This document shows, piece after piece, positions 933 to 40,959 of a DNA stretch of 64,000 nt; the stretch's first letter is position 1; each line of letters opens with the position of its first letter. A model generated the notes under the pieces. The model saw only the letters and a program-made list of their open reading frames with translations. It ran no database searches and was not told where the DNA came from. The DNA lies in the IMG/VR virus record IMGVR_UViG_3300049217_000071, positions 124,001 to 188,000 of that record. The stretch is one strand, 5' to 3'. Position numbers and translations under genes: made by a program.

Positions 933-1964
933 ATGTTAGCTCTGGATAAGATTGATCCACAATTTAGAAAGCTGGTCGACCAACTATTTTTCACCGATAG
1001 AACCGATCTGGACACTTCTAATTTCTCAGCATTGCTGGGAAACAAAGACGAACACTTTGCCTACCTACATGATCGCTTTACTCGCAGTTTAGAGATCTTC
1101 TGGGATGAGGCTTTTTGGTTACATCGTTTTGATCTACTATTGTCTTTACATTCCAAAAGGGCCTCTATGGTTTTAGAGCCGCACCTGATTTCTCAGTTCC
1201 GTTCTTTGATCATTAGGAATTCGCAAGCTAATATCAACACTGATAATGCCTATATACAGTTCGTAGCTTGGTCGAAAGCCAAGAGCAGTAGGAAGGAAGA
1301 CGTTTCGGCTATTCGAGATTTCTTGTTGGGCCTTCCTCATATCATTCAGATCAATAGACTAACTGGTATAGTTTCTAACTTTGCCCCTCATATCTTCCAA
1401 AGCTGTGATGAATACATCGAGATTATCTCCAAGAAGATTGGGCAAGTAGCTCGCAACTTTGAGGTCTTGCAGCAATTAGAAAAGCAGGGACTCAAAATTG
1501 ATAAGGGCCCCGTCTTCAAGTTAGCTAAAGACCTGTTTCTCAAAAGAGTGCCTAATCGTAGTAATAAGCGCGCCCTGTTCATTATGATGGAAGATACGGC
1601 AGTGATGGGTCATTTGCAATCGGAATATCGTCCCCCCGTTCATCGATCCCGTTTGACCGATCTAATAGTATCCTGTGATTACAAGGAATTAGAACAGCAT
1701 CACTTGCGCAACATCAAGAACCTGCTTATCTTGGACGCCACCTTAGCGGATGAAATCTTATTCACCTATCTAGACAGTTTATACACATGTAGGGCTGGAT
1801 ATAAACGATCTAACATCAAGCGACTCATCCGTGTTTGCAAGACTTTCTCACAACTCTCTTCCAAAAAAGTATTGGCTTATCTGGCATCTACTAACAGAAT
1901 GTCTGACATCAAATATGTCTTGAAGGCATTCCCAGAGTTGAAACCCCTCGCCCCTTTTATATGA
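933..1964 (+). CDS. hypothetical protein
   Basis: 343-aa ORF, no recognised motif. Confidence 0.75.
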   Translation: MLALDKIDPQFRKLVDQLFFTDRTDLDTSNFSALLGNKDEHFAYLHDRFTRSLEIFWDEAFWLHRFDLLLSLHSKRASMVLEPHLISQFRSLIIRNSQANINTDNAYIQFVAWSKAKSSRKEDVSAIRDFLLGLPHIIQINRLTGIVSNFAPHIFQSCDEYIEIISKKIGQVARNFEVLQQLEKQGLKIDKGPVFKLAKDLFLKRVPNRSNKRALFIMMEDTAVMGHLQSEYRPPVHRSRLTDLIVSCDYKELEQHHLRNIKNLLILDATLADEILFTYLDSLYTCRAGYKRSNIKRLIRVCKTFSQLSSKKVLAYLASTNRMSDIKYVLKAFPELKPLAPFI

Positions 1965-1971
1965 GCCTATT

Positions 1972-2295
1972 ATGATGCACCTAACTGAAAAAGCCGCCAA
2001 GAAGATTGAAGAGATTGCCAATGCCGAGGGTGTGGGGCATTTCACCATTCGTGCCAAAGTTATTGGCGGTGGCTGTGCGGGCATGACGAACGACATCTAT
2101 TTTGACGATCAGATTCTGGATACAGACGAAGTGACCGAGCTTGACGGTGTAAAAGTAGTTGTAGATTTGATGTCATTTCAGTATTTAGATGGCACCACTA
2201 TAGACTACGTAGATTCTGAAATGGGTGGAGGATTCAAGTTCTTAAACCCTAATGTGAAGTCATCGTGTGGCTGTGGGCAATCACAATCTTACTGA
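1972..2295 (+). CDS. iscA: HesB/IscA family Fe-S cluster carrier (copy 1)
   Basis: GGGCAG and C-terminal SCGCG motifs; NPNVKSSCGCG. Confidence 0.92.
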   Translation: MMHLTEKAAKKIEEIANAEGVGHFTIRAKVIGGGCAGMTNDIYFDDQILDTDEVTELDGVKVVVDLMSFQYLDGTTIDYVDSEMGGGFKFLNPNVKSSCGCGQSQSY

Positions 2296-2780
2296 CCTCG
2301 TTTGTTTAGCACATTTATCTGGGTTTTTAGCTCGGCAAATTTCTCTGTAATTTCCGCACCCAACTCTGGGTTCCATCTTCTGGTAACGGCATTGGTTCCC
2401 AGTTTGAGATCATTCATTTTGAGACAGAGTAATGCTTGTTCTTTTTTCACCATAAGATACGGTAGCATTGATTTGATGGCGTTAGCTGCCATAGTGTTAG
2501 TTATGATCCATTCATAGCACGGACGCCAGTTTTTGTGTAGTTTAGCTTTACCAGTCTTTTTGTGTCTCAGCTTGCCGCCCCCAAATTCTCTTTGTAGTAT
2601 TTGGATTGGTTCTATTTTGCAATTATGAGCGCTTAGTTTGATTCTATACTGAACTCTGGCAATACCTTTTTTGTCGGTATATTTGGCAGTGATAATAGTT
2701 ATCGAGCCGTCCGCATCAATGAATCCGGCCAGATAGGCGTGAATTATTTCCTTATCAGTAGGCATGTAGGTATCCTCCAC
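2289..2780 (-). mobile_element. free-standing LAGLIDADG homing endonuclease
   Basis: AYLAGFIDADGSITI single LAGLIDADG motif; opposite strand to neighbours. Confidence 0.9.
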
Positions 2781-2800
2781 CAGTTATATATCCGAGTAAG

Positions 2801-3040
2801 ATGAAGATCATCAAGCAATTTAAGGACCCAGAGTTTTACGATAAAAGGTATGGTCCCTATGCCGCCCCTGGTTGGTGGGCGTGGGGATTAGGTGATGACG
2901 GTGAATTATATTGTCAAAGCACTGGTTTTCCAGATTGTGGTAAAGAGTGGCACGAGTTGAGATACTCTGCTTTTTATCCTCGTCTAAAAGATATGAAGAA
3001 GATCGTCAAAGAATTTGGAAACTGGTTAGTTTGGATTTGA
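2801..3040 (+). CDS. hypothetical protein
   Basis: 79-aa ORF filling the gap; ends with the shared hydrophobic C-terminal motif. Confidence 0.65.
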   Translation: MKIIKQFKDPEFYDKRYGPYAAPGWWAWGLGDDGELYCQSTGFPDCGKEWHELRYSAFYPRLKDMKKIVKEFGNWLVWI

Positions 3041-3049
3041 GGTAAGTAT

Positions 3050-4201
3050 ATGAGCAAGCACCCCGTATTAGATATCATTGTCAAGAAGAGCCCGCATCTT
3101 TCCTGGATGGAAGATCGCACCGTGCTTCTTGTGCGCCACGGCTCTCACGCTTACGGCACCAACACGGCTGCCTCAGATGAAGATTTCAAGGGCATTGCTA
3201 TTTCTCCTAAGAAGTATTTCCTGGGCACGATGTCTCGCTTTGAGCAGGCCGATCTAAAGGCTCCTGATCCTGATGCCGTTATCTATGACATCCGTAAGTT
3301 CTTCAACCTGGCCGCTGATTGCAACCCTAACATCATTGAGGTGTTGCATACGGATCCTGCCGATCATTTCTTGGTGGATCCAATCGGTGAAATCATCTTA
3401 GAGCACAAGGACGCTTTCTTGTCCAAAAAGATCAAGCATACCTTCTTGGGTTATTCGGTGGCTCAACTCAAGAGGATCAAGACGCATAAGCGTTGGATTA
3501 TGGATCCTCCTAAGACGCCTCCTACCCGAGCCGAACTGGGCTTGCCAGAGCAGACCTTGATCCCACAAGATCAAATGGTCGCTGCCATGGCCGAAATCCA
3601 AAAGGAAATGGATCGTTTTCAGTTTGACTTTATGGAGGGGATGGAAGAGTCAGCCAAGATTGGTCTACGCAACACCGTTTCTGAAATGTTGGCCGAGTTG
3701 AAGATTACTTCTGACCAGCACTGGGAGTCAGCCGCTCGCAAGATCGGTTTGAGTGATAACCTCATTCAAGTGATGCAACGAGAGCGCCAATACACCAGCG
3801 CTAAACGTGAGTGGGATCAATACCAGAACTGGAGAAAGACGCGCAACCCAATGCGTGCCGCTCTGGAGGAGAAGTATGGATATGATACCAAACACGCTTA
3901 CCATTTGGTTCGACTCATTCGTATGTGTCGAGAGATTCTGACCACAGGTAAGGTTATTGTCAAACGTCCTGACCGTGAAGAGCTGTTAGCTATTCGCAAC
4001 GGTGCTTGGTCTTACGATCAGCTGATTGAGTTTGCTGATTCGGAAGACAAAGCATTAGCCGAGTTGTATCTGACTTCTACGGCTCTTCCCAAGACGCCCG
4101 ACAAAGAGATGCTCGATCAGCTATGTATCAAGTTGGTAGAGCGCTCTCTTTCCAGGTTCTCTTGGTATTCTGTTCGTAAGCTATTCAAGAACTTGAGGTA
4201 A
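3050..4201 (+). CDS. DNA polymerase beta superfamily nucleotidyltransferase (RlaP/YcgL-like)
   Basis: HGSHAYGTNTAASDEDFKG (GSxxxG...DxD), NPNIIEVL, YDTKHAYHLVRL. Confidence 0.88.
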   Translation: MSKHPVLDIIVKKSPHLSWMEDRTVLLVRHGSHAYGTNTAASDEDFKGIAISPKKYFLGTMSRFEQADLKAPDPDAVIYDIRKFFNLAADCNPNIIEVLHTDPADHFLVDPIGEIILEHKDAFLSKKIKHTFLGYSVAQLKRIKTHKRWIMDPPKTPPTRAELGLPEQTLIPQDQMVAAMAEIQKEMDRFQFDFMEGMEESAKIGLRNTVSEMLAELKITSDQHWESAARKIGLSDNLIQVMQRERQYTSAKREWDQYQNWRKTRNPMRAALEEKYGYDTKHAYHLVRLIRMCREILTTGKVIVKRPDREELLAIRNGAWSYDQLIEFADSEDKALAELYLTSTALPKTPDKEMLDQLCIKLVERSLSRFSWYSVRKLFKNLR

Positions 4202-4202
4202 T

Positions 4203-4787: not shown

Positions 4788-4803
4788 TACGGCATATAAG
4801 TAT

Positions 4804-5151: not shown

Positions 5152-5166
5152 CAAAGGAAAATCATC

Positions 5167-5391: not shown

Positions 5392-5415
5392 GGCGTTATA
5401 TACTCATGTGATACC

Positions 5416-6525: not shown

Positions 6526-6535
6526 ATCGCTGGCC

Positions 6536-6563
6536 TTGACACCCAATTTTTAGGATTTACAAT
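6536..6563 (+). promoter_or_regulatory. sigma70-type promoter
   Basis: TTGACA-N16-TACAAT 20 nt upstream of the thioredoxin ATG. Confidence 0.65.
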
Positions 6564-7128: not shown

Positions 7129-7404
7129 ATGTGGTTTGAAGATTTGATGCTCATAGCGCTGTTGGGCGTAGGTGTGTTCTTGATAGGCATTCCTTGCCAC
7201 AAGCTGATTACATCTATTCTCCCTAAAAAGAGAAACGCTCTCAAAGAAGCTAAGGAGAGGCTGGAACAGGCTCGCCTGGATTTGGAAGCGGCTCGCCTCA
7301 ATAAAGAGGCCGAGAAGCTGAATGAACGTATCTATGAGGAAGCTTTGCAAGAAGAGCAGGCCCTCGAAGAAGAGTTGAATGAACAACAGGAGAAACATAA
7401 ATGA
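7129..7404 (+). CDS. single-pass membrane protein with coiled-coil tail
   Basis: N-terminal hydrophobic helix, then an E/K-rich helix. Confidence 0.7.
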   Translation: MWFEDLMLIALLGVGVFLIGIPCHKLITSILPKKRNALKEAKERLEQARLDLEAARLNKEAEKLNERIYEEALQEEQALEEELNEQQEKHK

Positions 7405-8639
7405 GTCCAACAAGGAATGACGATAATTTTGGCTTGATTGTCAAGATGGTGATGGGGGCGATTGTCCTCATCGTAGGTGTTTGCGTGCTGTCTTGTAGCG
7501 TCACTACGGTGGATGCTAACGAGATTGTCATCAAGCAGGATGTGGTAGGCGGAGATTTGCACGTATGGGATACCCCAGGTGTTCATTGGCAGAACTTCGG
7601 CACTATCACTCGCTACAAGAGAAGCGAACAGTTGTGGTTCTCTATCAAGGAGGATGAAGGTAAGAAGACTGACGAATCCATCAAGGTGCGATTCAATGAC
7701 GGTGGCCACGGCAACATCTCCGGTTCTCTCCGTTATAGCCTCCCTACCAGCCCAGCTCAGATGCTAACCCTGCATCAGACCTATCACTCTATGGCAGCTA
7801 TTGACCACGAGCTGGTGCGTCAGGTAGTCAACAAGGGTGTTTATATGAGCGGTCCTTTGATGAGCAGCCGAGAGTCCTACGCTGAGAAGCGAGCCGACCT
7901 CATCAACTACATCACTGACCAGATTGTCAATGGTGTGTATCGCACGGAGCACGACACTATCAAAACCACGGATCCTCTGACCGGTCAAGAGAAGACGGTG
8001 GATGTGGTCAAGCCTAAGGTCAATACCAATTCACCTAACAGTATTGAGCGTGAAGAAGAGAGCCCCATTCAGAAGTTTGGAATGAGCGCTTCTAACATCA
8101 CCATCAACAACATTGACTACGATGTGGAAGTGGAAAAGCAGATTCAACAGCAACAGCAAGCCATTATGGCTGTGCAGCAAGCTATCGTCAATGCCCGTAA
8201 GGCAGAGCAAGATACGCTCACTGTGGAACAGCAAGGTAAGGCAGAAGCTGCCAAGGCTAAGTGGGCACAAGAAGTCGAGAAGGCAACCGCCGTGACTTCC
8301 GCCGAGAAGGATAAGGCAGTGGCCGTGACTCAGGCAGAGAAGAACAAGGAAGTGGCTCAGCTCAGCTTGGACACCGCTAAGTTGGCGGCACAAGAGACCA
8401 TCACTACCGCAACGGCAGGAGCCAATGCTCGTAAGATGGCTATCGCGGCTGACAACGCTTTGCAGGCCCGTTTGGATGCTTATGTAGAGGTCAACAAGGC
8501 TTGGGCAGATGCAGCCAGCAAGCAACGTCAGACGCCTGAAGTGGTTATGGGCGGAACTACTGGAAACTCTACCAGTTCTCTGATGGAAATGATGGCAGTC
8601 AAAGCTGCCCGCGATATGGCCGTCAACCCGAAGCCGTAA
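7401..8639 (+). CDS. SPFH/band 7 (flotillin-like) membrane protein
   Basis: N-terminal TM, SPFH-like core, AEQ/AEK-rich coiled coil. Confidence 0.8.
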   Translation: MSPTRNDDNFGLIVKMVMGAIVLIVGVCVLSCSVTTVDANEIVIKQDVVGGDLHVWDTPGVHWQNFGTITRYKRSEQLWFSIKEDEGKKTDESIKVRFNDGGHGNISGSLRYSLPTSPAQMLTLHQTYHSMAAIDHELVRQVVNKGVYMSGPLMSSRESYAEKRADLINYITDQIVNGVYRTEHDTIKTTDPLTGQEKTVDVVKPKVNTNSPNSIEREEESPIQKFGMSASNITINNIDYDVEVEKQIQQQQQAIMAVQQAIVNARKAEQDTLTVEQQGKAEAAKAKWAQEVEKATAVTSAEKDKAVAVTQAEKNKEVAQLSLDTAKLAAQETITTATAGANARKMAIAADNALQARLDAYVEVNKAWADAASKQRQTPEVVMGGTTGNSTSSLMEMMAVKAARDMAVNPKP

Positions 8640-10632: not shown

Positions 10633-10905
10633 GTGAAACAATCAGTTCAAGCAGAATGTAGTTCGTGTGGCGGCACTGGCGTCTATTGTGGGTTTGCAGA
10701 GCCCAGAGGCACAGGCGTAGTGTGTCTCAATTGTAATGGCACCGGTTGTCGCACCATTGAATATACGCCTTTTACGGCCATCAAGAGACGCAATGATGTC
10801 AGCCAGGTGATGCGTTCTCGTGGAACCTTTATTGCTACTGGTGTGGGCCCGGGAGGTAATGCTATTACCTATGAGGACTTCCTAAATGGAAAGAGGCCTC
10901 AATGA
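10633..10905 (+). CDS. small protein with DnaJ-type CxxCxGxG zinc finger
   Basis: CSSCGGTG and CLNCNGTG. Confidence 0.7.
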   Translation: MKQSVQAECSSCGGTGVYCGFAEPRGTGVVCLNCNGTGCRTIEYTPFTAIKRRNDVSQVMRSRGTFIATGVGPGGNAITYEDFLNGKRPQ

Positions 10906-11258
10906 ATAAATCCGTCAAGAAAAGAAACGACAATAAGCTAATACTTACGGTTCCTGATAAAGAATACCAGATATTAGTTTTTGCTGCAAAGCATCAGTCA
11001 GGGACATACAAAGTTTTCCAACTAATGGTAGAGGCCCTGAACGATGGTACTTGGAAATTTTTGGATCTGCCTGGAATAAGATCAACAATCATAGCTTGCT
11101 TTGACTGCCTAAGAATACAGGAGCGCTATGATTTTCTTCTGAACGAATCAAAAGACACTTTATCTTATGACAAAGACGGCTTCTATCTAAATAAAGAGCA
11201 TAAATTCGAGACACTTGACGAAGTAAAAAGGGCACTAGAAAATAAGGCGTTCTTATGA
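10902..11258 (+). CDS. hypothetical protein (C-terminal module shared with next gene)
   Basis: Ends HKFETLDEVKRALENKAFL. Confidence 0.7.
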   Translation: MNKSVKKRNDNKLILTVPDKEYQILVFAAKHQSGTYKVFQLMVEALNDGTWKFLDLPGIRSTIIACFDCLRIQERYDFLLNESKDTLSYDKDGFYLNKEHKFETLDEVKRALENKAFL

Positions 11259-11560
11259 TGAAAGAGTATGAATTCGTATCAATAATGGCAGAAGGTTATA
11301 GCAATCGTTTCTCTAAAGCACTTGAAGCCGTTGTCTCGGCCATCAATAACAAACATTGCGATATGCTCAACTTGGCCGCTGTCAGGATAAGAGTAGAGGA
11401 AGCAATGCAGGCTTTGGAAGTCAAGGTGCGTTTTGATTCACTTGCTAGTCAGAAAAAAAACAAGCTAACCTGTAATAATGCTGGTTTCGATCTGGATGGC
11501 CATAAGTTCGAGACATTGGATGAAGTGGAAAAAGCATTAGAGAACAAAGCATTTTTGTAA
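11255..11560 (+). CDS. hypothetical protein (C-terminal module shared with previous gene)
   Basis: Ends HKFETLDEVEKALENKAFL. Confidence 0.7.
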   Translation: MMKEYEFVSIMAEGYSNRFSKALEAVVSAINNKHCDMLNLAAVRIRVEEAMQALEVKVRFDSLASQKKNKLTCNNAGFDLDGHKFETLDEVEKALENKAFL

Positions 11561-20204: not shown

Positions 20205-20678
20205 ATGCCACCACGCCCTGTCCATAAATCAATCCCGGAATTAGAACTAACTTTGGCCCAGCAAAAGGCCGTCTTTACCCAGTTCCCTGATGCTACCTAC
20301 CATTACTACAATGGCTTCCAATCCAAAGCTGTCAATAAGGCTTATACCAAGTATGAGTTCAAGAGAATGGATTGGGGTATTTGGGTGATGCCTTATTGTG
20401 AGGTTGAGTTGGCACTTGGTGATAAAACGGAACTCATCAAGGTGTATTCATCACCTCGTCAAAGCCGATTGGTATATCTGGGCTGGGAGTATAAAACCAA
20501 GAGTCATATCATCAAGTTCTCCCGTATTGTTTTCAATTTCAAGCATAACAATTTCCGAGAGGATATGCTCAATGCTTGTCGAGCCGAAATGATGGGCTTC
20601 ATCAAAAACAAGCCTGGTCTCAAAATGGACGACAAACATTTAGAACCGCGTCTCAAGAAACTGTTAGTCTTTACCTAA
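20205..20678 (+). CDS. hypothetical protein
   Basis: 157-aa ORF ending RLKKLLVFT. Confidence 0.7.
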   Translation: MPPRPVHKSIPELELTLAQQKAVFTQFPDATYHYYNGFQSKAVNKAYTKYEFKRMDWGIWVMPYCEVELALGDKTELIKVYSSPRQSRLVYLGWEYKTKSHIIKFSRIVFNFKHNNFREDMLNACRAEMMGFIKNKPGLKMDDKHLEPRLKKLLVFT

Positions 20679-23269: not shown

Positions 23270-24487
23270 ATGAAGGAACTATTTACATTGGGCGAGCTAC
23301 ACGTTTCAGATTTCTTGAAAGATGGGGAGTCGCCTGCCGGTAAAGTGGAGATGAAGCTTTTGTTGGATGATAACGGCTCTGTAAGATTAGAAAAGAGCGC
23401 GCCCCTCAACACTATGTATGGTAAGTATTGGTATCGTTCGGGTATCAATTATACTATGAGAAATGAGCTTGAAAATATTGTCAGCTCAATAACTAAAGTT
23501 TACAAGCTCAAAGAAAACGATCTTTGGGTAGATATTGCCAGTAATGATGGAACCTTATTGAGTTTTGTCCCCAGCAACCTACTTACGGTAGGAATAGATC
23601 CGTGTGACGACTCATTCAAAATAGAGGCAGAAAAACACGCCGATCTTGTTATACAAGACTATTTTACAGCCTCCGCCTTCAAGCGGTCTAAATTTGGTCA
23701 TAAGAAAGCAAAAGTGATTACTTCGATAGCTGTCTTTTATGATTTGGAAGACCCGGGCACTTTCATCGATGATGTGGCTGAAATTATGGATGATGATGGT
23801 TTATGGGTGATGCAGCTTAGCTACACGCCTCTAATGATCAAACAAATGGCTTTTGATAACATATGCCACGAGCATATTTTCTATTACTCTCTCTTTAATC
23901 TAAAGTCTTTGCTTGAAAAGCACGGATTTCAGATTGTGGATTGCCAGCTTAATGATATCAATGGCGGTTCGTTCCGCGTTTATATTATGAAGACTATTGG
24001 TAATACGAAAGTATTTTCCTCGCAACCATATAGAGATGTTTGCAATTTTAGAATCAATTCCCTATTGGATCACGAGAGAACTCTAAAAATAGACTCCGTA
24101 GAGACTTGGAAGAATTTTTTTGAAGACATTGAACTCCTCAAAAAGAAGACGGTGGATTTTATTGTTTCGGAAAAGGCTAAAGGTAAGAAGATTTGGGGAT
24201 ATGGAGCTTCCACTAAAGGAAACACCTTACTACAATACTTAAACTTGGATCATACGTTAATAGATGGTATTGCCGAACGTAGCACCTACAAATGGGGTCT
24301 GAAAACGGTAGGAACCAATATTCCAATCTTTTCAGAAGCTGAGATGAGAAGCGCTAAGCCAGATTACCTGTTGGTTTTGCCCTGGCACTTTATCAACGAG
24401 TTCGTGGAAAGAGAAGCTGAGTTTCTGAAGGGCGGTGGCAAGTTTATTGTTCCGTGCCCCACTTTTGAAATCATAGGTCTCAAGTAA
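23270..24487 (+). CDS. NDP-sugar C-methyltransferase family, class I SAM
   Basis: YWYRSG, VDIASNDGTLL, FDNICHEH, NGGS, GASTKGNTLL, VLPWHF. Confidence 0.88.
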   Translation: MKELFTLGELHVSDFLKDGESPAGKVEMKLLLDDNGSVRLEKSAPLNTMYGKYWYRSGINYTMRNELENIVSSITKVYKLKENDLWVDIASNDGTLLSFVPSNLLTVGIDPCDDSFKIEAEKHADLVIQDYFTASAFKRSKFGHKKAKVITSIAVFYDLEDPGTFIDDVAEIMDDDGLWVMQLSYTPLMIKQMAFDNICHEHIFYYSLFNLKSLLEKHGFQIVDCQLNDINGGSFRVYIMKTIGNTKVFSSQPYRDVCNFRINSLLDHERTLKIDSVETWKNFFEDIELLKKKTVDFIVSEKAKGKKIWGYGASTKGNTLLQYLNLDHTLIDGIAERSTYKWGLKTVGTNIPIFSEAEMRSAKPDYLLVLPWHFINEFVEREAEFLKGGGKFIVPCPTFEIIGLK

Positions 24488-26669: not shown

Positions 26670-27650
26670 TTATACCAAGTGTATGAGGTTAGTGATTTGT
26701 AAAAGCTCTAATATTCTAGAAGAATAGGTATGTTCTTTATAAGCTCTTTTGTGCCCATTGATTCCTACCTGTGTAGCAATATCTGGATTAGCTTTACAAT
26801 ATCTAACAATATCGACAACTTGGGCCGCCGAGTGTGCAACGAAGATTTCGCTACCTTCTACGAAATAACTTTCGATACCTGGAAAATGCCAAGAGATAGT
26901 GGGGCGGCCCGCGGCTAAACAGTATAATAATCTGTCAGAAAAATAATGACCAATACTATTAAAGTTGCTTAGGCTAAAGGTACAGATACTGTTATTGTAT
27001 ATAGCGTTGCAATCTCTAGGAGAACACACTTTTGCTCCCCAGGCCGCAGAATGATATCCACTGCCAAAAAGACCAAATCGTTTCCCAAAATTGCTGTGTA
27101 AAACATTAGCGCATTCTACTCGTAGATGTCCGTCAGGAAAATTTCTTCCATAGTTATTACCTATGAAAGAGATATCATAATCAAATTCTGTTTTGTTCAT
27201 AGGAAAACTATAGTTAGGATCATATCCAATTTGCCAGTATTTGATGTTATGACAGCCGGCTTGCCTATACATTTCTAATTGTCCTGTGCTTGAAATCAGA
27301 GCGTGATCTATAACATTCGCAATCTTAATGAATTCTTTGATGGCGCCCGCCCTAACATCACCTGACCAGTTAGTAATCACCACGCCAGGACATGAGGCTC
27401 TTGCCTGTTCTATAATTTGTGGCTCAATAAGTCCCGTAAACTGCAACTGCATATGTATAAGATGCGGTTGAAATGATTTTACTTTTTCTAAAAAGTCTCG
27501 GGCCACTTCACCTTTGTTTTTAGTTCGTAACCAAATTCGATGAAAGTCGCAAATCTGTAATTGGACGCCCACATTATTCCAGGCATCATACATTCCTTGT
27601 TGGACACCATCAGCATCATTGAGTGGTAAGTATAAAACCTTTAGCATCAT
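26670..27650 (-). CDS. CgeB/YkvP-type GT-B glycosyltransferase
   Basis: DISFIGNNY, YFSDRLLYCLAAGRP, GHKRAYKEHTY. Confidence 0.8.
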   Translation of the reverse strand: MMLKVLYLPLNDADGVQQGMYDAWNNVGVQLQICDFHRIWLRTKNKGEVARDFLEKVKSFQPHLIHMQLQFTGLIEPQIIEQARASCPGVVITNWSGDVRAGAIKEFIKIANVIDHALISSTGQLEMYRQAGCHNIKYWQIGYDPNYSFPMNKTEFDYDISFIGNNYGRNFPDGHLRVECANVLHSNFGKRFGLFGSGYHSAAWGAKVCSPRDCNAIYNNSICTFSLSNFNSIGHYFSDRLLYCLAAGRPTISWHFPGIESYFVEGSEIFVAHSAAQVVDIVRYCKANPDIATQVGINGHKRAYKEHTYSSRILELLQITNLIHLV

Positions 27651-29449
27651 TCTCCCATCATTTTGATCATAGATTCATTGAGACTATTATTATGCGACAT
27701 ATCAAGTTGTGTTTTGTTTTGAGAGAATCTGTTGATGCATTCTGTAATGGCAGCTTGTAAGTTTTCTCTGTTGATATTGGAATCCATACCTTGACTCTTA
27801 GCTATTTGCACAAATGAGCCATCACAGGCCGCGGTGTTGTTAGTGATAAGTGGAATATTCATAGCTTTAGCTAAACCTGCAATGCCCGACATATAGTATT
27901 TATTGTTAGTTAGATCAATAATTCCTTTAGATCCTGACAAAGATTTGATGATAAAGCTGTAGTCATCCGCATCGGAAACAAAGATACCAAATGGTGGCAA
28001 CTTAATGGACGACCCTATTACTACTAAATTACCGAATTTTGTTTCCCAAGAGTCTAGAAGTATTTTAGTTAGCTCCATATTCTTCTCAAAATAAACAAAG
28101 TAATTGCCCTTTTCTTGGATGATCTGTAAGAGCGGCCAAGGACGACCCACTCTCTTGACATTAGCATCGGGAAGGTTTTTCAGAATCTCTTCTGCATTCA
28201 ATAAAGAGGGCGTCATAATAACGGGACACTGTTTAAGAATATTTAGATGTGTATAGTTGAGTGTGATACCGCTGGGCCATTCTTCAATCCATATTTTGCC
28301 CGGATAAAGGTTGTTGATAGAACACATAATAAAGTCAGGGTTTTCGTTAGATTTTGGAAACCCTTGCATTGTCAGAGTGTTCTGATGCACTTTCAAGTTT
28401 GGAAAGAGCGGCATAATGTTTTTGGCCCAAGCTTCCGCACCTGGGGTGGTTGGTAAAATAGTTCCGGCAGTTGAGAAGGTGACGGGGGCTAAAAATTGTT
28501 CGGGCCTAATGATAGCGAATTCTTTGCTAATTTTTCGCACTTGATCTGTGTTTGGATCGTGTTTAGGATCTGTGAGGCGCATAGTATGTCCAAGATTTTC
28601 GGGTCGCAAATCAACCCTGTTTCTATGCCAAGGTGCCCCAGGTTCTAATGTTATTACGTTAGAAGATTGGGGAGGTCTTGGACTGGCAGTCATTCGAGGT
28701 CTAACCGGTATACCACTATCCTGAACTGTAGAGATATGTCCCATAGGTGGAGTGGGGTTAGATAGAAGGCTACGGGCCGCATCCACGGGTGTAGTGCCGT
28801 ATTCTATCTGAATAGGGCTATTGTTTCTTACACAGAACCAAATGCGTCGATGTTTGCTATCGATGGACTTTTCGTTTCTCGACTGCCAATCATAAGCATA
28901 GTCACTAGCATTGTAGATAGCCTTATCTACTCGTTTGAAGTTCATTCCACATTCTGTGAGAACACGTTCAACAGCGGCGGCTGTAGGACGACAGCCCATA
29001 CCATTACTTGATAAGTCGTAGATGCCCTTGTTTTCTGGAACGGCAACACACAGAAAGGGGTCATCTGAATCGCACACGGCCGTTTCCAGTACTAGATTAG
29101 TGGTAGAAGCACAAACTGCACGAAGATGTGCCTCAAAGTTATTGAGATGGCACAGCAGACCCATATCTAAGGTTAGGTCAAAAGATTTGCCATGAAATGG
29201 CCAGTTGCCGTCTAAATCGGCTTTGACACACTTGATGCCGCTGAATTTCTTAGATACAATCTTGAGGTGCTCCTGGCGAGCGTCTACCCCCGTGACATCA
29301 GAGCCCAAACGGTATAGGACTCCACCAATATCGCCATAACCGCAACCCAAATCAAGAACTTTCTTGTGGTAAAAGAATTTGTGTCCATAGAAATCGACAA
29401 TGCCTTTCGCACGCTTCTGGTTCCACTCAAAGTATCTTCCATCGAACAT
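27647..29449 (-). CDS. class I SAM methyltransferase fused to a C-terminal GT-like domain
   Basis: VLDLGCGYG, GVDAR, GLLCHL; Pro-rich linker; C-terminal WIEEW/IMTPS domain. Confidence 0.72.
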   Translation of the reverse strand: MFDGRYFEWNQKRAKGIVDFYGHKFFYHKKVLDLGCGYGDIGGVLYRLGSDVTGVDARQEHLKIVSKKFSGIKCVKADLDGNWPFHGKSFDLTLDMGLLCHLNNFEAHLRAVCASTTNLVLETAVCDSDDPFLCVAVPENKGIYDLSSNGMGCRPTAAAVERVLTECGMNFKRVDKAIYNASDYAYDWQSRNEKSIDSKHRRIWFCVRNNSPIQIEYGTTPVDAARSLLSNPTPPMGHISTVQDSGIPVRPRMTASPRPPQSSNVITLEPGAPWHRNRVDLRPENLGHTMRLTDPKHDPNTDQVRKISKEFAIIRPEQFLAPVTFSTAGTILPTTPGAEAWAKNIMPLFPNLKVHQNTLTMQGFPKSNENPDFIMCSINNLYPGKIWIEEWPSGITLNYTHLNILKQCPVIMTPSLLNAEEILKNLPDANVKRVGRPWPLLQIIQEKGNYFVYFEKNMELTKILLDSWETKFGNLVVIGSSIKLPPFGIFVSDADDYSFIIKSLSGSKGIIDLTNNKYYMSGIAGLAKAMNIPLITNNTAACDGSFVQIAKSQGMDSNINRENLQAAITECINRFSQNKTQLDMSHNNSLNESMIKMMGE

Positions 29450-31462: not shown

Positions 31463-32254
31463 ATGTCAAGCAAGCTAAAAGACCGCATGGAGCGCTATCA
31501 GGCGCAAAGTGATCACAAACTACTGGAACGATTGCCGATTGTTATCTGCATCAATGGTCGAGGTTTCACCAAAGTGACCCAATTGCTGGACAAGCCTTAT
31601 TGTTCCAAGTTAGCGGAATGCCTCATCTCCACTATGATTTACATCTGTCCGATGATTGAGGGAGCTTTGTTTGCCTATCAGCACAATGATGAGATTGTCA
31701 TCATCGCTCGTAATGACCAAACTAACGATACCTCTCCCTGGTTCGATAACAAGATTCAGAAGATTTGTTCGGCTACCGCCTCTATTGCTACGGTGCATTT
31801 CAACAAGTGTGCAGCTTCCTTGCAATTGGATCTAACTGGTGACGCCGCCTTTCTCTCACAGGTTTTCACGCCACCCAATGTGGCAGAAGCGATTCAGTCG
31901 GTTGTTTACAAACAGCAACAGAACTTTCACACTTCCATTCAGTCGGCTTGTTTGTATGAACTGCTCAAGAAGTATAACAAAGATGCCATCAAGGATATGT
32001 TGACTGGACTTTCTATTGATGAGAAAGTAGATTTGCTTTCCCAGGAATGTGGGGTAGATTTCAACAGCTATCCTATTTCTTTCAGGCGTGGGGCGGCTTG
32101 CTATAAGGTTCCTAAGGTGATAGACGGCGTGATGAAAAATAGATGGCAGCTCAACTCGGAATTACCTATCTTTGCTAAAGATCAGTCTTTTCTATCCAAC
32201 CTCTTCAAGAACGGGGCCGATATTTTTAGACAAGAAGGTTTCGATGAACCTTGA
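31463..32254 (+). CDS. tRNA-His guanylyltransferase (Thg1)-like protein
   Basis: LKDRMERY, INGRGF, HNDEI, WFDNKIQKICS, YKQQQN, RRG. Confidence 0.85.
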   Translation: MSSKLKDRMERYQAQSDHKLLERLPIVICINGRGFTKVTQLLDKPYCSKLAECLISTMIYICPMIEGALFAYQHNDEIVIIARNDQTNDTSPWFDNKIQKICSATASIATVHFNKCAASLQLDLTGDAAFLSQVFTPPNVAEAIQSVVYKQQQNFHTSIQSACLYELLKKYNKDAIKDMLTGLSIDEKVDLLSQECGVDFNSYPISFRRGAACYKVPKVIDGVMKNRWQLNSELPIFAKDQSFLSNLFKNGADIFRQEGFDEP

Positions 32255-32735
32255 CAAATTCGTAAAGAGCAAAGGGTATCAACATAGCTGCCCCTTTTGT
32301 GGAACAGATCTTATCTCTATTGACGATCCTTATTTTGGCAATCGTGGGCAAAAGGGTTATGCGTGTGAAGTTTGTTTTATTGAAGGTGTTCTGACTAAGT
32401 CAGGAAAGCCTTTCTCTCGATACAACATCGGAGTAGTAGAAAATGTCGATGTAGGCCCCCACCGTATTTTAGAGCAGCTCATCGTGGATGAAACTTTCTA
32501 CATTCATCATAAAGAGAACAAGTGGTATAATGTCCATAACGATATGGTCAAGAGTCAAACCGTGATGGTATTGACGGAGCCGATGAATGAAAGTCATATT
32601 TTTTATGCGGGCGAGATCCCCATTGGTTTAGTCTGGATTAGTGACTTAGTGGTGCTACCTTATATTGATTCTTGGACGCTAACTGATGAAGCAGCCACCA
32701 TTTCTAAAATACGCACCTATCTTACTTTTATGTGA
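32244..32735 (+). CDS. hypothetical Zn-ribbon protein
   Basis: CPFC, CEVC; ends KIRTYLTFM. Confidence 0.65.
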   Translation: MNLDKFVKSKGYQHSCPFCGTDLISIDDPYFGNRGQKGYACEVCFIEGVLTKSGKPFSRYNIGVVENVDVGPHRILEQLIVDETFYIHHKENKWYNVHNDMVKSQTVMVLTEPMNESHIFYAGEIPIGLVWISDLVVLPYIDSWTLTDEAATISKIRTYLTFM

Positions 32736-33252: not shown

Positions 33253-33326
33253 GCTTGCTTAGTATAACGGCATTATATCGCCCTTGTAACGCGATGAAGA
33301 GGGTTCGACTCCCTCCGCAAGCTCCA
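33253..33326 (+). tRNA. tRNA-Thr(UGU)
   Basis: Anticodon loop CTTGTAA, T arm GAGGG-TTCGACT-CCCTC, encoded CCA; C31-C39 mismatch. Confidence 0.88.
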
Positions 33327-33436
33327 ACCCTGTGGGCTCCCCTTTACTGGGGTCAAAGATGCTCAGGTAGTTTGATGTTCTCGCAAGAGAATTATGGTAA
33401 GGTGCTCAATCTAAACATCAAACGAGAGCACATTAG

Positions 33437-33511
33437 GCTGTTGTAGTTCAGTGGCAGAATTCCTCATTGGTAATGAGGCGGTCGTGGGTTCGATCCCCAC
33501 CAACAGCTCCA
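33437..33511 (+). tRNA. tRNA-Thr(GGU)
   Basis: Acceptor GCTGTTG/CAACAGC, CCTCA-TTGGTAA-TGAGG, encoded CCA. Confidence 0.93.
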
Positions 33512-33624
33512 GACTTTGCGTCTCAGGTTAGTGAAACTAACGTCGGCAGAACCCCCGACACAGTGTCCCGACAGTGGCAGTCAAATTGACGATAGATGGA
33601 TGACGGACAGTTGATACAAAGTAT

Positions 33625-33698
33625 GCTGATGTCATATAGTGGCATTATGTCGCCTTCGTAACGCGATCACGTGAGTTCGATTCTCACCTTCAGCTCCA
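33625..33698 (+). tRNA. tRNA-Thr(CGU)
   Basis: Loop TTCGTAA, T arm GTGAG-TTCGATT-CTCAC, encoded CCA; C31-C39 mismatch. Confidence 0.88.
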
Positions 33699-33737: not shown

Positions 33738-33739
33738 AT

Positions 33740-34091
33740 GGGGATGACCTGGTTTCGACCGAGTAAAGACTTATCGAAATGATGCAGACAGAAGAGATTA
33801 CACTTCTCAAAGTAATCACATCTTAAATGCTGATGAATTTGCATTTGCTGAAGCGGCCTAAGAACCCTTCACATTCTTTAGATAAGACTGCTTGAGTAAT
33901 CTAAAGCGTGTAAACCTACAAAGCTGGTTATTGAGTAGGGCTACGATATTCAATAATGAGACCACAGTAGATATCCCGTCAAAGAGAATATTTGACAGCG
34001 TTGTCAATGACGCTAATATTGACTATGTCTGTGAATGATTTTCGATGATGGCGTATTTGGGACTGCGGTTCGATTCCGCACATCTCCACCA
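33740..34091 (+). ncRNA. ssrA: tmRNA; tag peptide (A)ADEFAFAEAA at 33829-33861
   Basis: 5' GGGGATGACCTGGTTTCGAC, 3' GGTTCGATTCC...CATCTCCACCA, G3-U70 pair, TTAAAT resume context, ORF ending AA-stop. Confidence 0.93.
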
Positions 34092-36966: not shown

Positions 36967-36992
36967 AATTTCTGTTCTTGGTATAGTGGTCG

Positions 36993-37691: not shown

Positions 37692-37749
37692 AATTGAACC
37701 TCACTTATAACAATGGCCAATTATTAGTAGTCGGGTGCAATCATTTTAT

Positions 37750-37822
37750 GGTCCTATAACTCAAAGGCAGAGATTCGTCTCTAAAACGAAGGGTGCGGTT
37801 TCGAGATCCGCTAGGACCGCCA
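37750..37822 (+). tRNA. amber suppressor tRNA (CUA anticodon), copy 1
   Basis: Acceptor GGTCCTA/TAGGACC, G73, CCA; TTCGT-CTCTAAA-ACGAA arm; T loop TTCGAGA. Confidence 0.87.
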
Positions 37823-37834
37823 GAAGGAAAGACT

Positions 37835-38131
37835 ATGAAATTTCCGTCCCTCAAGAATGAAAATCCACGAACTTGGAAGTGCAAAATCTTTGGATGCAAT
37901 GATGAAGAACTGCCGCTTATCTGGCAAGAACCGGGTGAGAAGCACGGTATCAAGGGATGGAGTTTTGCCACAGCTACCAGAACTTTAACCACCTACATAG
38001 TTCGAGGATGTAAGTGGTGTAGGAATTATAGGACAATCTTCGGTGATGTCGATGAGATTTGGCCTAAATGGTTGTGTGATTGTGAGATTTGTGAAAAGAG
38101 TAGAGTAAATGACACATCTACCCATAGCTAA
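37835..38131 (+). CDS. hypothetical Cys-rich protein
   Basis: ATG 37835 after AAGGA; CKIFGC, CKWC, CDCEIC. Confidence 0.6.
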   Translation: MKFPSLKNENPRTWKCKIFGCNDEELPLIWQEPGEKHGIKGWSFATATRTLTTYIVRGCKWCRNYRTIFGDVDEIWPKWLCDCEICEKSRVNDTSTHS

Positions 38132-39101: not shown

Positions 39102-39115
39102 TAGGAGAAACTACT

Positions 39116-39280
39116 ATGTGGTTATTGGAATTGATTGGTATTTCGTTGGTAGCAGGAACGGTGCTCGGCATTTCTTGGCGAGTGATTGAAGATTGGTGGG
39201 ATAAGGGCGAAGCTGAAAGGTTGGCTCAGAAGGTGGCTGCTGCGGAAGAAGCCGCTTCTTATACCAATAAACCTGAATAA
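39116..39280 (+). CDS. small membrane protein (below ORF-track cutoff)
   Basis: AGGAG RBS; MWLLELIGISLVAGTVLGISW. Confidence 0.6.
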   Translation: MWLLELIGISLVAGTVLGISWRVIEDWWDKGEAERLAQKVAAAEEAASYTNKPE

Positions 39281-39288
39281 GGTTTGAT

Positions 39289-39361
39289 GCGCCATTAGCT
39301 CAGTTGATAGAGCGGTCGACTCTAAAACGAACGGTCGTGGGTTTGAGTCCCACATGGCGCA
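39289..39361 (+). tRNA. amber suppressor tRNA (CUA anticodon), copy 2; weak anticodon stem, no encoded CCA
   Basis: Acceptor GCGCCAT/ATGGCGC, D stem GCTC/GAGC, loop CTCTAAA, T arm GTGGG-TTTGAGT-CCCAC. Confidence 0.75.
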
Positions 39362-39389
39362 CTAAAACTACTAAAATGATATACTCAAC

Positions 39390-39656
39390 ATGACTAGATT
39401 AGAAATCCAAGCACGCGTTAGAGTAATTCGTGAAGAATTAGAAAACAGGCATAAAACCGGCATGACCAAATTGGCCGATGCTGATGGCATTCCGGCCGAA
39501 GCTATTTTTCAAGCCGCCAAGAAGATCAAAGGTCTCAAACCTCGTGTGGAGTATCCTTCCATCTACGAAAACGCAGAGTTTGTAGGAACGGGCGATGCTC
39601 AGTATTCCATCGAGTGGGAATCACTCGATCCCAACGATCACAGAAACGACAGATAA
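39390..39656 (+). CDS. hypothetical protein
   Basis: 88-aa ORF downstream of TGATATAC. Confidence 0.65.
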   Translation: MTRLEIQARVRVIREELENRHKTGMTKLADADGIPAEAIFQAAKKIKGLKPRVEYPSIYENAEFVGTGDAQYSIEWESLDPNDHRNDR

Positions 39657-39678
39657 TTCAAGGAGAAAAACAAGCTAA

Positions 39679-40218
39679 ATGCAACCAGCCACTACCAACA
39701 ACCAAACACAGTATCGCACCCGTATCAACCAATTCATTCGCGTCCCTCAGATCAGGGTCGTGTTAGCCGATGGCAGCAACGGGGGCATTATGAATACGCA
39801 AGATGCTCTCAAGCTGGCCCGAGAGCAAGGACTAGATCTAATCGAGATCAATCCTAAGAGCGTTCCGCCTGTCTGCAAGATTGCCGACTATGGCAAGATG
39901 AAGTATGACGACAAGAAGAAGCTTCAGAACGCCAAGAAAAACCAGCAGGTGCAAGAGCTGAAAGAGCTAACCTTCCGTCCCAACACGGACGAGGGCGACT
40001 TGGCTCACAAGCTGGAGAAGGCTAAAGAGTTCATTGCGGAAGGCAACAAGGTCAAGTTCACGGTGCGTTTCCGTGGTCGTGAAATTGTTCACGCCAATAT
40101 CGGCAAAGAGAAGCTGGAATGGTTCTTGCAACAGTTAGATGGTTTGGTTGCCCCTAATCCCCAGGTAAATCTGGAAGGGAAATTCATGTCAATGGTGGTT
40201 TCACCTGTTAGAAAGTAA
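39679..40218 (+). CDS. infC: translation initiation factor IF-3
   Basis: RINQFIRVPQIRV, LDLIEI, PPVCKIADYGK, KELTFRP, KVKFTVRFRGRE. Confidence 0.96.
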   Translation: MQPATTNNQTQYRTRINQFIRVPQIRVVLADGSNGGIMNTQDALKLAREQGLDLIEINPKSVPPVCKIADYGKMKYDDKKKLQNAKKNQQVQELKELTFRPNTDEGDLAHKLEKAKEFIAEGNKVKFTVRFRGREIVHANIGKEKLEWFLQQLDGLVAPNPQVNLEGKFMSMVVSPVRK

Positions 40219-40222
40219 GATC

Positions 40223-40528
40223 ATGGCACTCACTAGAACACAAAAAATCCAAAGAGCTAAGCTACTCTTGAAAACCGCCCAAAAAGCTATTGCGCCTTAT
40301 CAAAAAAAGCTAGATGCCGCTGAAGCCGAGCTTCATAGAGCAGAAGTTTCCTTCGATAAGGGTGAGCGTGTTAGAGTAACGCAAACCTGTAAACGTGGCT
40401 GCTGTGTGGAATGCGAATTCAATGGTGTGATAGTCGGCCCTACACCTAACGGTATGTGGAACGTCAAAGCTGATAACAGCGGTCATATTCACGAATACAT
40501 CTATGAAGGCGATATGAAGCGACTATGA
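40223..40528 (+). CDS. hypothetical protein
   Basis: 101-aa ORF. Confidence 0.65.
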   Translation: MALTRTQKIQRAKLLLKTAQKAIAPYQKKLDAAEAELHRAEVSFDKGERVRVTQTCKRGCCVECEFNGVIVGPTPNGMWNVKADNSGHIHEYIYEGDMKRL

Positions 40529-40959
40529 AGTGCCCTAATTGCCTCACCACGATGAAGTGTATTAGAGAGATTCATCACGTGCCCGGACAGCCCGGTAGAG
40601 AACGAATGGATCTGCACTGTATCAAACCAATCAAGGGCAAAGACTATGAGGGGCGTGGGTGCGAACTCATATGTCATATGGGCGTCATCACAGAAGATCC
40701 TAAAGAGTGGGTTTGCCACGATTACAATTTCGAGTTTAGGCACGAAGGGAAACGCTTCTACCTAAGAGGGTATGATTATTTAGTTGATTCAATTCACCAA
40801 ACTTTTCATCGTCCCTACGAAAAAGCTACCATCCTTTCTATAAGTGGTGGAGATCAAATAATGAAGGTAGAATTCATCCCAATTTCTACCGGAGACAATA
40901 TGCACGAAGAAGCCTGGAAACTCTTCCATCGTCTCCGAAACCTGGTTATATTCTCGTAA
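40525..40959 (+). CDS. hypothetical Zn-ribbon protein
   Basis: CPNC; ends RLRNLVIFS. Confidence 0.65.
   Translation: MKCPNCLTTMKCIREIHHVPGQPGRERMDLHCIKPIKGKDYEGRGCELICHMGVITEDPKEWVCHDYNFEFRHEGKRFYLRGYDYLVDSIHQTFHRPYEKATILSISGGDQIMKVEFIPISTGDNMHEEAWKLFHRLRNLVIFS

What the first reader, a model, noticed from the sequence alone, without database searches (positions are those of the whole stretch)
933..40959. Unrelated proteins share one C-terminal motif: a possible docking tag or degron
Otherwise unrelated ORFs end with Phi-[KR]-x-Phi-Phi-x-[FW]-x-COOH: LKPLAPFI (933), LKKLLVFT (20205), IRTYLTFM (32244), LRNLVIFS (40525). Looser matches are FGNWLVWI (2801), MRQFLLVW (16831), QKLLFN (5167) and ALENKAFL (10902, 11255). 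A shared extreme C-terminal peptide resembles a hub-binding tag (compare the T4 gp45 clamp-binding C-termini of gp43/gp55/gp33), a packaging signal, or a degron for the phage Clp/AAA proteins.
Basis: partly seen in the sequence, partly recalled or inferred. Interest (0 to 1): 0.72.

Follow-up and report, generated by a model that had tools for sequence, protein, structure and literature searches.

The report
Shared tail marks one phage family
The shared C-terminal peptide is real and conserved, but it mostly marks one undescribed, many-copy family of small zinc-ribbon proteins in huge phages rather than a tag on unrelated proteins, and its function is still unknown.

Summary
The quoted C-termini exist, and the motif is far from chance. 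Across the whole 268-kb phage contig, 8 proteins end with it against 0.16 expected.

The carriers are mostly not unrelated. Seven of the eight true carriers are small (103-208 aa) proteins with an N-terminal CxxC zinc ribbon, a variable beta-sheet body and a conserved C-terminal module of about 25 residues: [LI]-P-x-F-x-x-D-F-S-[DN]-x-x-K-L-x-x-K-[IL]-K-T-[YL]-h-h-F-S-COOH (h = hydrophobic). A profile of that module finds about 121 distinct 50%-identity clusters among 1.84 billion proteins, and every one ends flush with the C-terminus. AlphaFold places the motif at the end of a confident C-terminal amphipathic helix.

- **Window 32244 and 40525:** members of this family.
- **Window 20205:** carries the same terminal nonapeptide on a body with a different N-terminus; homology is unresolved.
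- **Window 933 and all five "loose" matches:** chance level, or a separate tandem paralogue pair.

There is no Pfam, PHROG or PDB match. The docking-tag or degron reading is untested, and the predicted structure counts against a free peptide. It is not excluded, because strict C-terminal register and conserved polar helix residues hint at a shared interaction surface.

The parts
40525..40959 (+). Family member, 144 aa: N-terminal CxxC zinc ribbon, seven predicted beta strands, C-terminal helix ending ...KLFHRLRNLVIFS.
   Evidence: Sequence. 79 homologues, several on contigs of 190-511 kb, keep the tail. AlphaFold pLDDT 86.9, pTM 0.82, helix 126-143. Tail scores 14.7 bits, above all internal windows. 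With tails removed, the zinc-ribbon region still aligns weakly with the short subfamily (E about 0.002-0.003).
40867..40956 (+).
32244..32735 (+). Family member of the long subfamily, 163 aa from the ATG (an upstream TTG at 32172 is also open). CxxC...CxxC, ends ...SKIRTYLTFM.
   Evidence: The long-subfamily profile finds it at E = 3e-15, and at E = 1e-8 with the last 26 residues removed. An orthologue in relative G001 (45% identity) ends EKIKTYILFS. Tail scores 21.9 bits.
32655..32732 (+). C-terminal module of 32244 (last 26 residues).
20205..20678 (+). Carrier of the same terminal nonapeptide (RLKKLLVFT) on a different body, 157 aa: N-terminal helix instead of a zinc ribbon, then a beta sheet and two C-terminal helices. 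Either a separate family or a very remote branch.
   Evidence: 41 homologues; HLEPRLKKL is the most conserved block of the protein. Two tandem copies in G002 and G003, at 35% and 21% identity, end RLKKLLIFT and KLKKLLIFA. AlphaFold pLDDT 87.1, terminal helix 148-155. Its BFVD matches are a different set from those of 40525. Tail scores 13.3 bits with no internal window as high. Against the zinc-ribbon profiles only the tail aligns, apart from a weak body segment against 40525 (E about 0.01).
20637..20675 (+). Terminal 13 residues of 20205 (HLEPRLKKLLVFT).
933..1964 (+). Not a member: 343-aa protein ending LKPLAPFI, a chance look-alike of the degenerate motif.
   Evidence: No zinc ribbon, and two prolines inside the motif. 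Scores at background on the family matrix (-11.8 bits, 261 internal windows as good). One such hit is expected at P = 0.14. No relatives were found, so conservation could not be tested.
10902..11560 (+). Not members: tandem paralogue pair (10902-11258 and 11255-11560) that share ALENKAFL by descent.
   Evidence: 38% identity, E = 9e-21. They meet only 2 of the 5 motif positions.

Best explanation
The motif is the last nine residues of the signature C-terminal module of a previously undescribed family of small proteins in huge phages. The family is present in many copies per genome, and the motif is shared mainly by descent.

**Architecture of a typical member (about 100-210 aa).**
- An N-terminal zinc ribbon (CPxC ... 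C-x-H or CxxC).
- A fast-evolving, mostly acidic beta-sheet body.
- An invariant ending: [LI]-P-x-F-x-x-D-F-S-[DN]-x-x-K-L-x-x-K-[IL]-K-T-[YL]-h-h-F-S-COOH (h = hydrophobic). This reads as a last beta strand, a capping turn and an amphipathic helix that always stops one residue after the Phe.

**Shown.** The family exists, the module sits strictly at the C-terminus, it is conserved at the protein level rather than the DNA level, and several carriers are homologous outside the tail.

**Inferred from AlphaFold and the helical periodicity.** One face of the helix (positions -12, -11, -8, -5, -4) packs on the sheet and holds the fold together, which is why the module survives when the body has diverged beyond recognition. 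The most conserved residues (K-13, K-9, T-6, F-2) lie on the other side of the helix. They probably form a second conserved surface, either against the zinc ribbon or for a partner common to all paralogues.

**Guess.** The variable bodies give each paralogue a different target, for example in host takeover or counter-defence.
For: **Enrichment and out-of-sample replication.**

**Discreteness.** An independent scoring matrix separates 8 carriers (11-30 bits) from everything else (0.8 bits or less).

**Shared zinc ribbon.** Seven of the 8 carriers have N-terminal CxxC pairs, as do 103 of 121 metagenomic members. Most of the exceptions look like N-terminally cut gene calls.

**Homology beyond the tail.**
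- Profiles with the tail removed still find 32244, 106052, 115384, 27775 and 46635.
- With 26 residues removed, the L004 group against the short subfamily gives E = 3e-16, and short against long gives E = 7e-6.

**Conservation in relatives.**

**Copy number.** A 30-residue profile finds 7, 4, 9 and 9 copies in this contig and three relatives. Every copy ends at the stop codon, and three lie in tandem in G003.

**Breadth.**
- 123 clusters reach E <= 1e-3 among 1.84 billion representatives, and about 121 are true.
- All of these are flush with the C-terminus.
- The Phe sits exactly one residue from the end in 116 of the 116 sequences where the core motif could be located; 3 others had no detectable core.

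**Tail versus body.** Mean identity is 50% in the tail and 16% in the body, against 9% for shuffled bodies.

**Predicted structure.**
- In 40525 the motif ends a confident helix (residues 126-143; pLDDT 94-95 over residues 111-140, 73 over the last four).
- The model matches one apparent orthologue and at least six same-fold proteins at 7-16% identity (TM 0.48-0.64) from uncultured phages in BFVD.

**Protein-level constraint.** Synonymous codons differ among copies and the downstream DNA is unrelated.
Against: - The body of ORF 20205 cannot be shown to be homologous to the zinc-ribbon members. Only the tail aligns with the short and long profiles, its N-terminus is a helix, and its BFVD matches are a different set. 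At least one occurrence may therefore be a transferred or convergent module.
- The strongest conservation falls on polar residues and a Phe that are not on the main hydrophobic face, and the register to the C-terminus is absolute. A purely structural role does not obviously require either.
- Function is unknown: there is no Pfam, PHROG, PDB or AlphaFold DB match.
Confidence: 0.75

Rival explanations
1. Hub-docking or sorting signal. The terminal helix with its free C-terminus is recognised by one common partner, so a diversified set of paralogues, and the differently built 20205 family, are all recruited to the same machine or place. Candidates are a protease complex, the virion or a replication factor.
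For: - Register to the C-terminus is absolute, in 116 of the 116 sequences where the core motif could be located, and all true database hits are flush with the end.
- The highest information content is on K-9, K-7, T-6 and F-2, which lie off the main hydrophobic face.
- The tail is much more conserved than the body across paralogues.
- The same nonapeptide is nearly invariant in the 20205 family, whose body is not detectably related.
Against: - AlphaFold builds the motif as part of a confident helix in the folded domain, not as a flexible extension.
- No DnaN-type clamp domain (PF00712) was detected in this contig or in the complete relative G003; the gp45-type domain (PF02916) was searched in this contig only.
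- The carriers are not polymerases, sigma factors or other known clamp clients.
- No partner has been identified.
Confidence: 0.2
2. C-terminal degron. The tail targets these proteins for timed destruction by the phage's own ClpP pair with an AAA+ unfoldase.
For: - The contig encodes two adjacent ClpP genes (window about 48588-49747), an AAA ATPase (57652-59043) and a tmRNA (33740-34091).
- The ClpP pair is also present in relatives G001 and G003, which carry the family.
Against: - The tail ends h-F-S and is basic and helical, unlike ssrA-type tags.
- The phage's own tmRNA tag is ADEFAFAEAA.
- The tail is predicted to be structured.
- Co-occurrence rests on three related genomes only.
- A degron would not explain conservation of the preceding strand and the DFSD turn.
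Confidence: 0.07
3. Chance similarity of hydrophobic C-termini, or a motif defined after the fact.
For: - The motif is degenerate and was defined after seeing the data.
- ORF 933 and the five loose matches are indeed at chance level.
Against: - Out-of-sample replication at P = 7e-6.
- The independent matrix gives a clean gap between carriers and everything else.
- Conservation in relatives, and about 121 database clusters.
Confidence: 0.01
4. A DNA or RNA element (promoter, terminator or recombination site) at gene 3' ends that happens to be translated.
For: None beyond the fixed position at gene ends.
Against: The copies use different synonymous codons for Leu, Lys, Phe and Ser. They use both TAA and TGA stops, and the downstream sequence is unrelated.
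Confidence: 0.01

Closest known systems
Lineage-specific expansions of small zinc-ribbon proteins in jumbo phages, e.g. the roughly 35-copy zinc-ribbon family of Bacillus phage G (Iyer et al. 2021, PMC7824862, read)
   Same: Many scattered and tandem paralogues per large phage genome. Small proteins with an N-terminal zinc ribbon. No known function. Plausibly diversified binders.
   Different: Homology to the phage G family was not tested. This family is defined by an invariant 25-residue C-terminal strand-turn-helix module flush with the C-terminus, which that paper does not describe. The bodies here are mostly acidic (median pI 5.3 without the tail), which argues against generic DNA binding.
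T4 and RB69 gp45 sliding-clamp-binding C-terminal peptides of gp43, gp55 and gp33
   Same: A short, hydrophobic, aromatic-containing peptide at the extreme C-terminus of several proteins of one phage.
   Different: Those tails are flexible extensions on unrelated replication and transcription proteins and dock on a phage clamp. Here the carriers are paralogues, the peptide is the end of a predicted structured helix, and no clamp domain was detected in this contig, nor a DnaN-type one in the complete relative G003.
Poxvirus ankyrin/PRANC (F-box-like) multigene families (analogy from general knowledge, not tested)
   Same: A viral multigene family with variable target-binding bodies and a conserved module at the extreme C-terminus, present in many paralogues per genome.
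   Different: PRANC is a known adaptor to the host SCF ubiquitin ligase. No partner is known here, and the fold and sequence are unrelated. This is an analogy for the hub-docking reading only.
ssrA/tmRNA-type C-terminal degrons recognised by ClpXP or ClpAP (general knowledge)
   Same: A signal that depends on the C-terminus; the phage encodes ClpP and a tmRNA.
   Different: ssrA-type tags are unstructured and end in small nonpolar residues; the phage's own tag ends AEAA. The family tail is basic, helical and ends F-S.

Membership tests
New family: zinc ribbon plus C-terminal LPxFxxDFSDxxKLxxKIKTYhhFS module (defined here) | Terminal module scores above all internal windows on a matrix built from independent metagenomic members | tested here: met
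   Met by window 20205, 32244 and 40525 and by genome 27775, 46635, 75972, 106052 and 115384. Not met by window 933, 2801, 16831, 5167, 10902 or 11255.
New family: zinc ribbon plus C-terminal LPxFxxDFSDxxKLxxKIKTYhhFS module (defined here) | N-terminal CxxC ... CxxC or C-x-H zinc ribbon | tested here: met
   Present in 32244, 40525 and the five members outside the window, and in 103 of 121 database members. Absent from 20205, whose N-terminus is a predicted helix.
New family: zinc ribbon plus C-terminal LPxFxxDFSDxxKLxxKIKTYhhFS module (defined here) | Homology detectable outside the tail | tested here: inconclusive
   - Clear for 32244 (E = 1e-8), 106052 and 115384.
- Marginal for 27775 and 46635 (E = 0.006-0.007).
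- Weak for 40525 (E about 0.002-0.003, zinc-ribbon region).
- Not detected for 75972.
- For 20205, only a weak body segment against 40525 (E about 0.01).
New family: zinc ribbon plus C-terminal LPxFxxDFSDxxKLxxKIKTYhhFS module (defined here) | Module flush with the C-terminus, with exactly one residue after the Phe | tested here: met
   116 of the 116 sequences where the core motif could be located. All hits in four genomes end at the stop codon.
T4-type clamp-binding C-terminal tails | The phage (or host) sliding clamp is the docking hub, and a clamp gene is present | tested here: inconclusive
   PF02916 (gp45) and PF00712 (DnaN) give no hit in this contig, which is only 62% complete. PF00712 gives no hit in the complete 452-kb relative G003. 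The host clamp is unknown, and divergent clamps could be missed.
T4-type clamp-binding C-terminal tails | Carriers are otherwise unrelated replication or transcription proteins | tested here: not met
   The carriers are paralogous small zinc-ribbon proteins with no Pfam or PHROG family.
T4-type clamp-binding C-terminal tails | The tail is a flexible peptide outside the folded domain | tested here: not met
   AlphaFold builds a helix at 126-143 of 40525 (pLDDT 94-95 over residues 111-140, 73 over the last four) and at 148-155 of 20205 (pLDDT about 72-83). This is a prediction only.
Bacterial beta-clamp-binding motif (QL[SD]LF type; general knowledge) | A conserved Gln opens the pentapeptide | tested here: not met
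   The corresponding position (-6) is Thr in 92% of members.
ssrA-like ClpX/ClpA C-terminal degron | An unstructured tail ending in small nonpolar residues (LAA/AA type) | tested here: not met
   The tail ends h-F-S and is predicted helical. The phage's own tmRNA tag ends AEAA.
ssrA-like ClpX/ClpA C-terminal degron | Tail-dependent degradation | not testable with these tools
   Needs reporter stability assays.
Phage G-type zinc-ribbon expansion (PMC7824862) | Sequence homology to that family | not tested
   Only the description in the paper was read. tblastn of 40525 against 50,697 GenBank phage records found nothing.

The most novel reading that the evidence does not exclude
The invariant C-terminal strand-turn-helix, with its fixed free end and its K-13/K-9/T-6/F-2 ridge, is a docking module. 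It would recruit a diversified set of adaptor-like paralogues, and the differently built 20205 family, to one common phage or host machine such as the phage's ClpP/AAA protease or the virion. That would make it a bacteriophage counterpart of viral families like poxvirus ANK-PRANC, which combine a variable body with a conserved C-terminal adaptor.
Probability: 0.2. Interest if true: 0.7.

Novelty: new variant of a known kind. Interest (0 to 1): 0.42.

Why it matters
Huge phages carry hundreds of genes with no assigned function. This analysis groups at least eight genes of this contig, 9-10 of a complete 452-kb relative, and about 121 database clusters into one recognisable family, defined by a simple C-terminal signature of about 25 residues that current libraries (Pfam, PHROGs, PDB) do not hold. 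A conserved zinc ribbon, a hypervariable body and an invariant C-terminal helix in absolute register together resemble a diversified binder or adaptor family. Such a family is a good candidate for host takeover or counter-defence functions, and it gives a concrete handle for experiments: delete or mutate the last residues.

Tried and rejected
**Named relatives.** Megablast of 20 kb, and tblastn of a methyltransferase and of ORF 40525, against 50,697 GenBank phage records found nothing.

**Related loci.**
- The mixed alignment A1 had no stretch conserved enough to search with.
- The 478-aa protein and ORF 933 found nothing in IMG/VR or in metagenome contigs.
- Tail conservation of ORF 933 therefore could not be tested.

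**Fold searches.** The two AlphaFold models gave no convincing match.
- ORF 40525 was searched against PDB by Foldseek, AlphaFold DB clusters, ESM Atlas structures and an all-against-all PDB alignment; best Z = 5.0.
- ORF 20205 was searched by the all-against-all PDB alignment; best Z = 5.5, weakly GNAT-like.
- Protein-atlas feature searches returned nothing usable.

**Family libraries.** Pfam and PHROGs on all carriers, and Pfam and PDB sequence profiles on the family alignment, gave no family.

**Complex prediction.** A homodimer job for ORF 40525 returned no verdict (score 0.00). It counts neither for nor against binding.

**DNA-level explanation.** Rejected: synonymous codons differ among copies.

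**Possible extra member.** Genome 63881-64141 (ending RIIKLAVFA) scores only 0.8 bits on the family matrix and is not counted.

**TAG recoding.**
- TAG is the rarest stop (13 of 352 genes), and tRNA genes with a CUA anticodon are present.
- Only two TAG-ending ORFs run on in frame into coding-like sequence, so this is inconclusive.
- It does not affect the family, whose members all end in TAA or TGA.


Full report
**Setting.** The window is bases 124,001-188,000 of a single 268,344-bp virus contig with 44.7% G+C. CheckV rates the contig about 62% complete. No GenBank phage record is similar at the DNA or protein level. No gene finder was available, so I called genes with a codon-usage score. 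This gave a strict set of 352 genes and an inclusive set of 414. A C-terminus depends only on the stop codon, so the choice of start codon does not affect the tests.

**The observation.** All quoted C-termini are present. The coordinates are ORF starts.
- The strict motif h-[KR]-x-h-h-x-[FW]-x-COOH (h = hydrophobic) ends 8 of 414 proteins. From its frequency at internal positions, 0.16 are expected (P = 9e-12).
- Composition shuffles average 0.20 hits, and 1,422 spurious ORFs give one.
- The motif was defined inside the window, yet it ends 4 of 311 proteins outside the window against 0.118 expected (P = 7e-6). This replication means the core finding is not an artefact of defining the motif after seeing the data.

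**Who carries it.**
- Seven of the eight true carriers are 103-208 aa and have an N-terminal CxxC pair.
- Their similarity extends about 25-30 residues upstream of the end: a hydrophobic strand with Pro, a D-F-S-D-like turn, then the helix.
- I built a scoring matrix from the last nine residues of metagenomic family members only. It puts eight C-termini of this contig at 11-30 bits. The best of 79,245 internal windows reaches 9.2 bits, and the next C-terminus reaches 0.8.
- The eight carriers are window 20205, 32244 and 40525, and genome 27775, 46635, 75972, 106052 and 115384.
- ORF 933 scores at background.
- With these proteins removed, the motif is not enriched at C-termini. There is 1 hit against 0.15 expected, and near-matches number 8 against 5.4. 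The only general C-terminal bias is towards basic residues.
- ORFs 10902 and 11255 are tandem paralogues.

**Are the carriers related beyond the tail?** Largely yes.
- Family profiles with the last 26 residues cut off still find genome 106052 (E = 5e-33), window 32244 (E = 1e-8), genome 115384 (E = 4e-6), genome 27775 (E = 0.006) and genome 46635 (E = 0.007) among 1,834 ORFs.
- In profile-profile comparisons with 26 residues removed, the L004 group against the short subfamily gives E = 3e-16, and short against long gives E = 7e-6.
- ORF 40525 keeps only a weak match over the zinc-ribbon region (E about 0.002).
- ORF 20205 is the exception. Against the short and long profiles only its tail aligns. 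A weak body segment aligns with the 40525 group (E about 0.01) whether or not tails are present.

**Conservation elsewhere.**
- ORF 40525 has 79 homologues, several on contigs of 190-511 kb, and they keep LFHRLRNLxIFS.
- The L004 group keeps DFSDKxKLYxKLKTYLLFS, and this is the best-conserved block of the protein.
- In the 20205 group, HLEPRLKKL is the best-conserved block.
- In three IMG/VR relatives of 252, 349 and 452 kb, orthologues at 21-45% identity keep the tail.
- A 30-residue profile finds 7, 4, 9 and 9 copies in the four genomes. Every copy ends at the stop codon, all new ones have a CxxC N-terminus, and three lie in tandem.
- A 44-position profile searched against 1.84 billion cluster representatives returns 123 hits at E <= 1e-3. 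Two are repeat-protein false positives. All the rest end flush with the C-terminus.
- Mean pairwise identity is 50% in the last 25 residues and 16% in the rest, against 9% for shuffled bodies.
- The constraint acts on the protein. The copies use different synonymous codons and different stop codons, and their downstream DNA is unrelated.

**Structure.**
- AlphaFold gives a confident model of ORF 40525 (pLDDT 86.9, pTM 0.82), with seven beta strands and a single helix at residues 126-143. The motif is the end of that helix; pLDDT is 94-95 over residues 111-140 and 73 over the last four.
- The model of ORF 20205 (pLDDT 87.1) has an N-terminal helix, a beta sheet, a helix at 118-134 and a short terminal helix at 148-155.
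- Neither model matches a solved or AlphaFold DB fold convincingly.
- In the viral model library, 40525 matches one apparent orthologue and at least six same-fold proteins at 7-16% identity (TM 0.48-0.64) from uncultured phages. ORF 20205 matches three different proteins. This fits two structural groups in the same phage lineage.
- On a helical wheel, positions -12, -11, -8, -5 and -4 form the hydrophobic face.
- The most informative residues, K-9, K-7, T-6 and F-2, are not on that face. K-13, K-9, T-6 and F-2 fall within about 60 degrees of each other.
- The Phe is exactly one residue from the end in 116 of the 116 sequences where the core motif could be located.
- Without the tail, the bodies are mostly acidic, with a median pI of 5.3.

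**Interpretation.**
No DnaN-type clamp domain (PF00712) is detectable here or in the complete relative G003, and the gp45-type domain (PF02916) was searched in this contig only. The carriers are not clamp clients. The tail does not resemble ssrA-type tags, and the phage's own tmRNA tag is ADEFAFAEAA.
- Three observations go beyond what a packing helix needs: the absolute register to the C-terminus, the conserved polar ridge, and the presence of the same nonapeptide on the 20205 body. I therefore keep a shared interaction surface or docking role as a live minority hypothesis.
- The ClpP pair is present here and in two relatives, but that is weak circumstantial evidence.
- A homodimer prediction gave no verdict.

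**Comparison with known systems.**
- The nearest described phenomenon is the lineage-specific expansion of small zinc-ribbon proteins in jumbo phages, such as the roughly 35 copies in Bacillus phage G (PMC7824862). Homology to that family was not tested.
- The family has no Pfam, PHROG or PDB relative.
- It is therefore a new family of a known general kind. Its function is unknown.

Noticed in passing
window 33740-34091 (+): A phage-encoded tmRNA gene (Rfam RF00023, 113.7 bits) with tag peptide ADEFAFAEAA. It sits just after three tRNA-Thr genes at 33253-33698.
   Followed up: partly
window 37750-37822 and 39289-39362 (+); also relatives G002 and G003: Two tRNA genes with a CUA anticodon (amber suppressors). 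The second is confirmed by Rfam. TAG is the rarest stop (13 of 352 genes). A family gene in the relatives G002 and G003 has an in-frame TAG. In this contig two TAG-ending ORFs continue in frame into coding-like sequence: genome 92981-93352, and window 61081-61428 followed by 61444-62040. TAG read-through or partial recoding is possible, but the evidence is inconclusive.
   Followed up: partly
window about 48588-49747 (+): Two adjacent ClpP protease genes (Pfam PF00574, E about 1e-47 each). The pair is conserved in relatives G001 and G003. In both relatives the second copy's match has an in-frame TGA. A 478-aa gene with no Pfam family follows at 49787-51223.
   Followed up: partly
window 10902-11258 and 11255-11560 (+): Tandem paralogues (38% identity, E = 9e-21) with overlapping stop and start codons. 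Both end HKFETLDEVxxALENKAFL. Function unknown.
   Followed up: yes
window 40973-41047 (+): A tRNA-Arg(CCU) gene lies 14 bases downstream of family member 40525.
   Followed up: no
window 55898-59043, 3050-4201, 7401-8639, 23270-24487, 27647-29449 (-), 62844-63965: Recognisable genes in the window:
- type IA topoisomerase with a C-terminal zinc ribbon
- AAA ATPase
- RlaP-like nucleotidyltransferase
- SPFH/Band 7 protein
- C-methyltransferase
- 600-aa SAM methyltransferase on the minus strand
- Dam-like N6-adenine methyltransferase
   Followed up: no
relatives G002 and G003 (loci L006, L007 and others): The 349-kb record that IMG/VR labels a provirus and the 452-kb record with terminal repeats gave pairwise equivalent hits in every search. 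They appear to be nearly the same phage. In G003, family copies sit in tandem at 408761-409529 with another at 406249.
   Followed up: no
locus L045 (Logan contig, 3.4 kb): A family member lies next to a phage-encoded translation initiation factor IF3 gene and an R2K ATP-grasp gene. This is typical huge-phage content.
   Followed up: no
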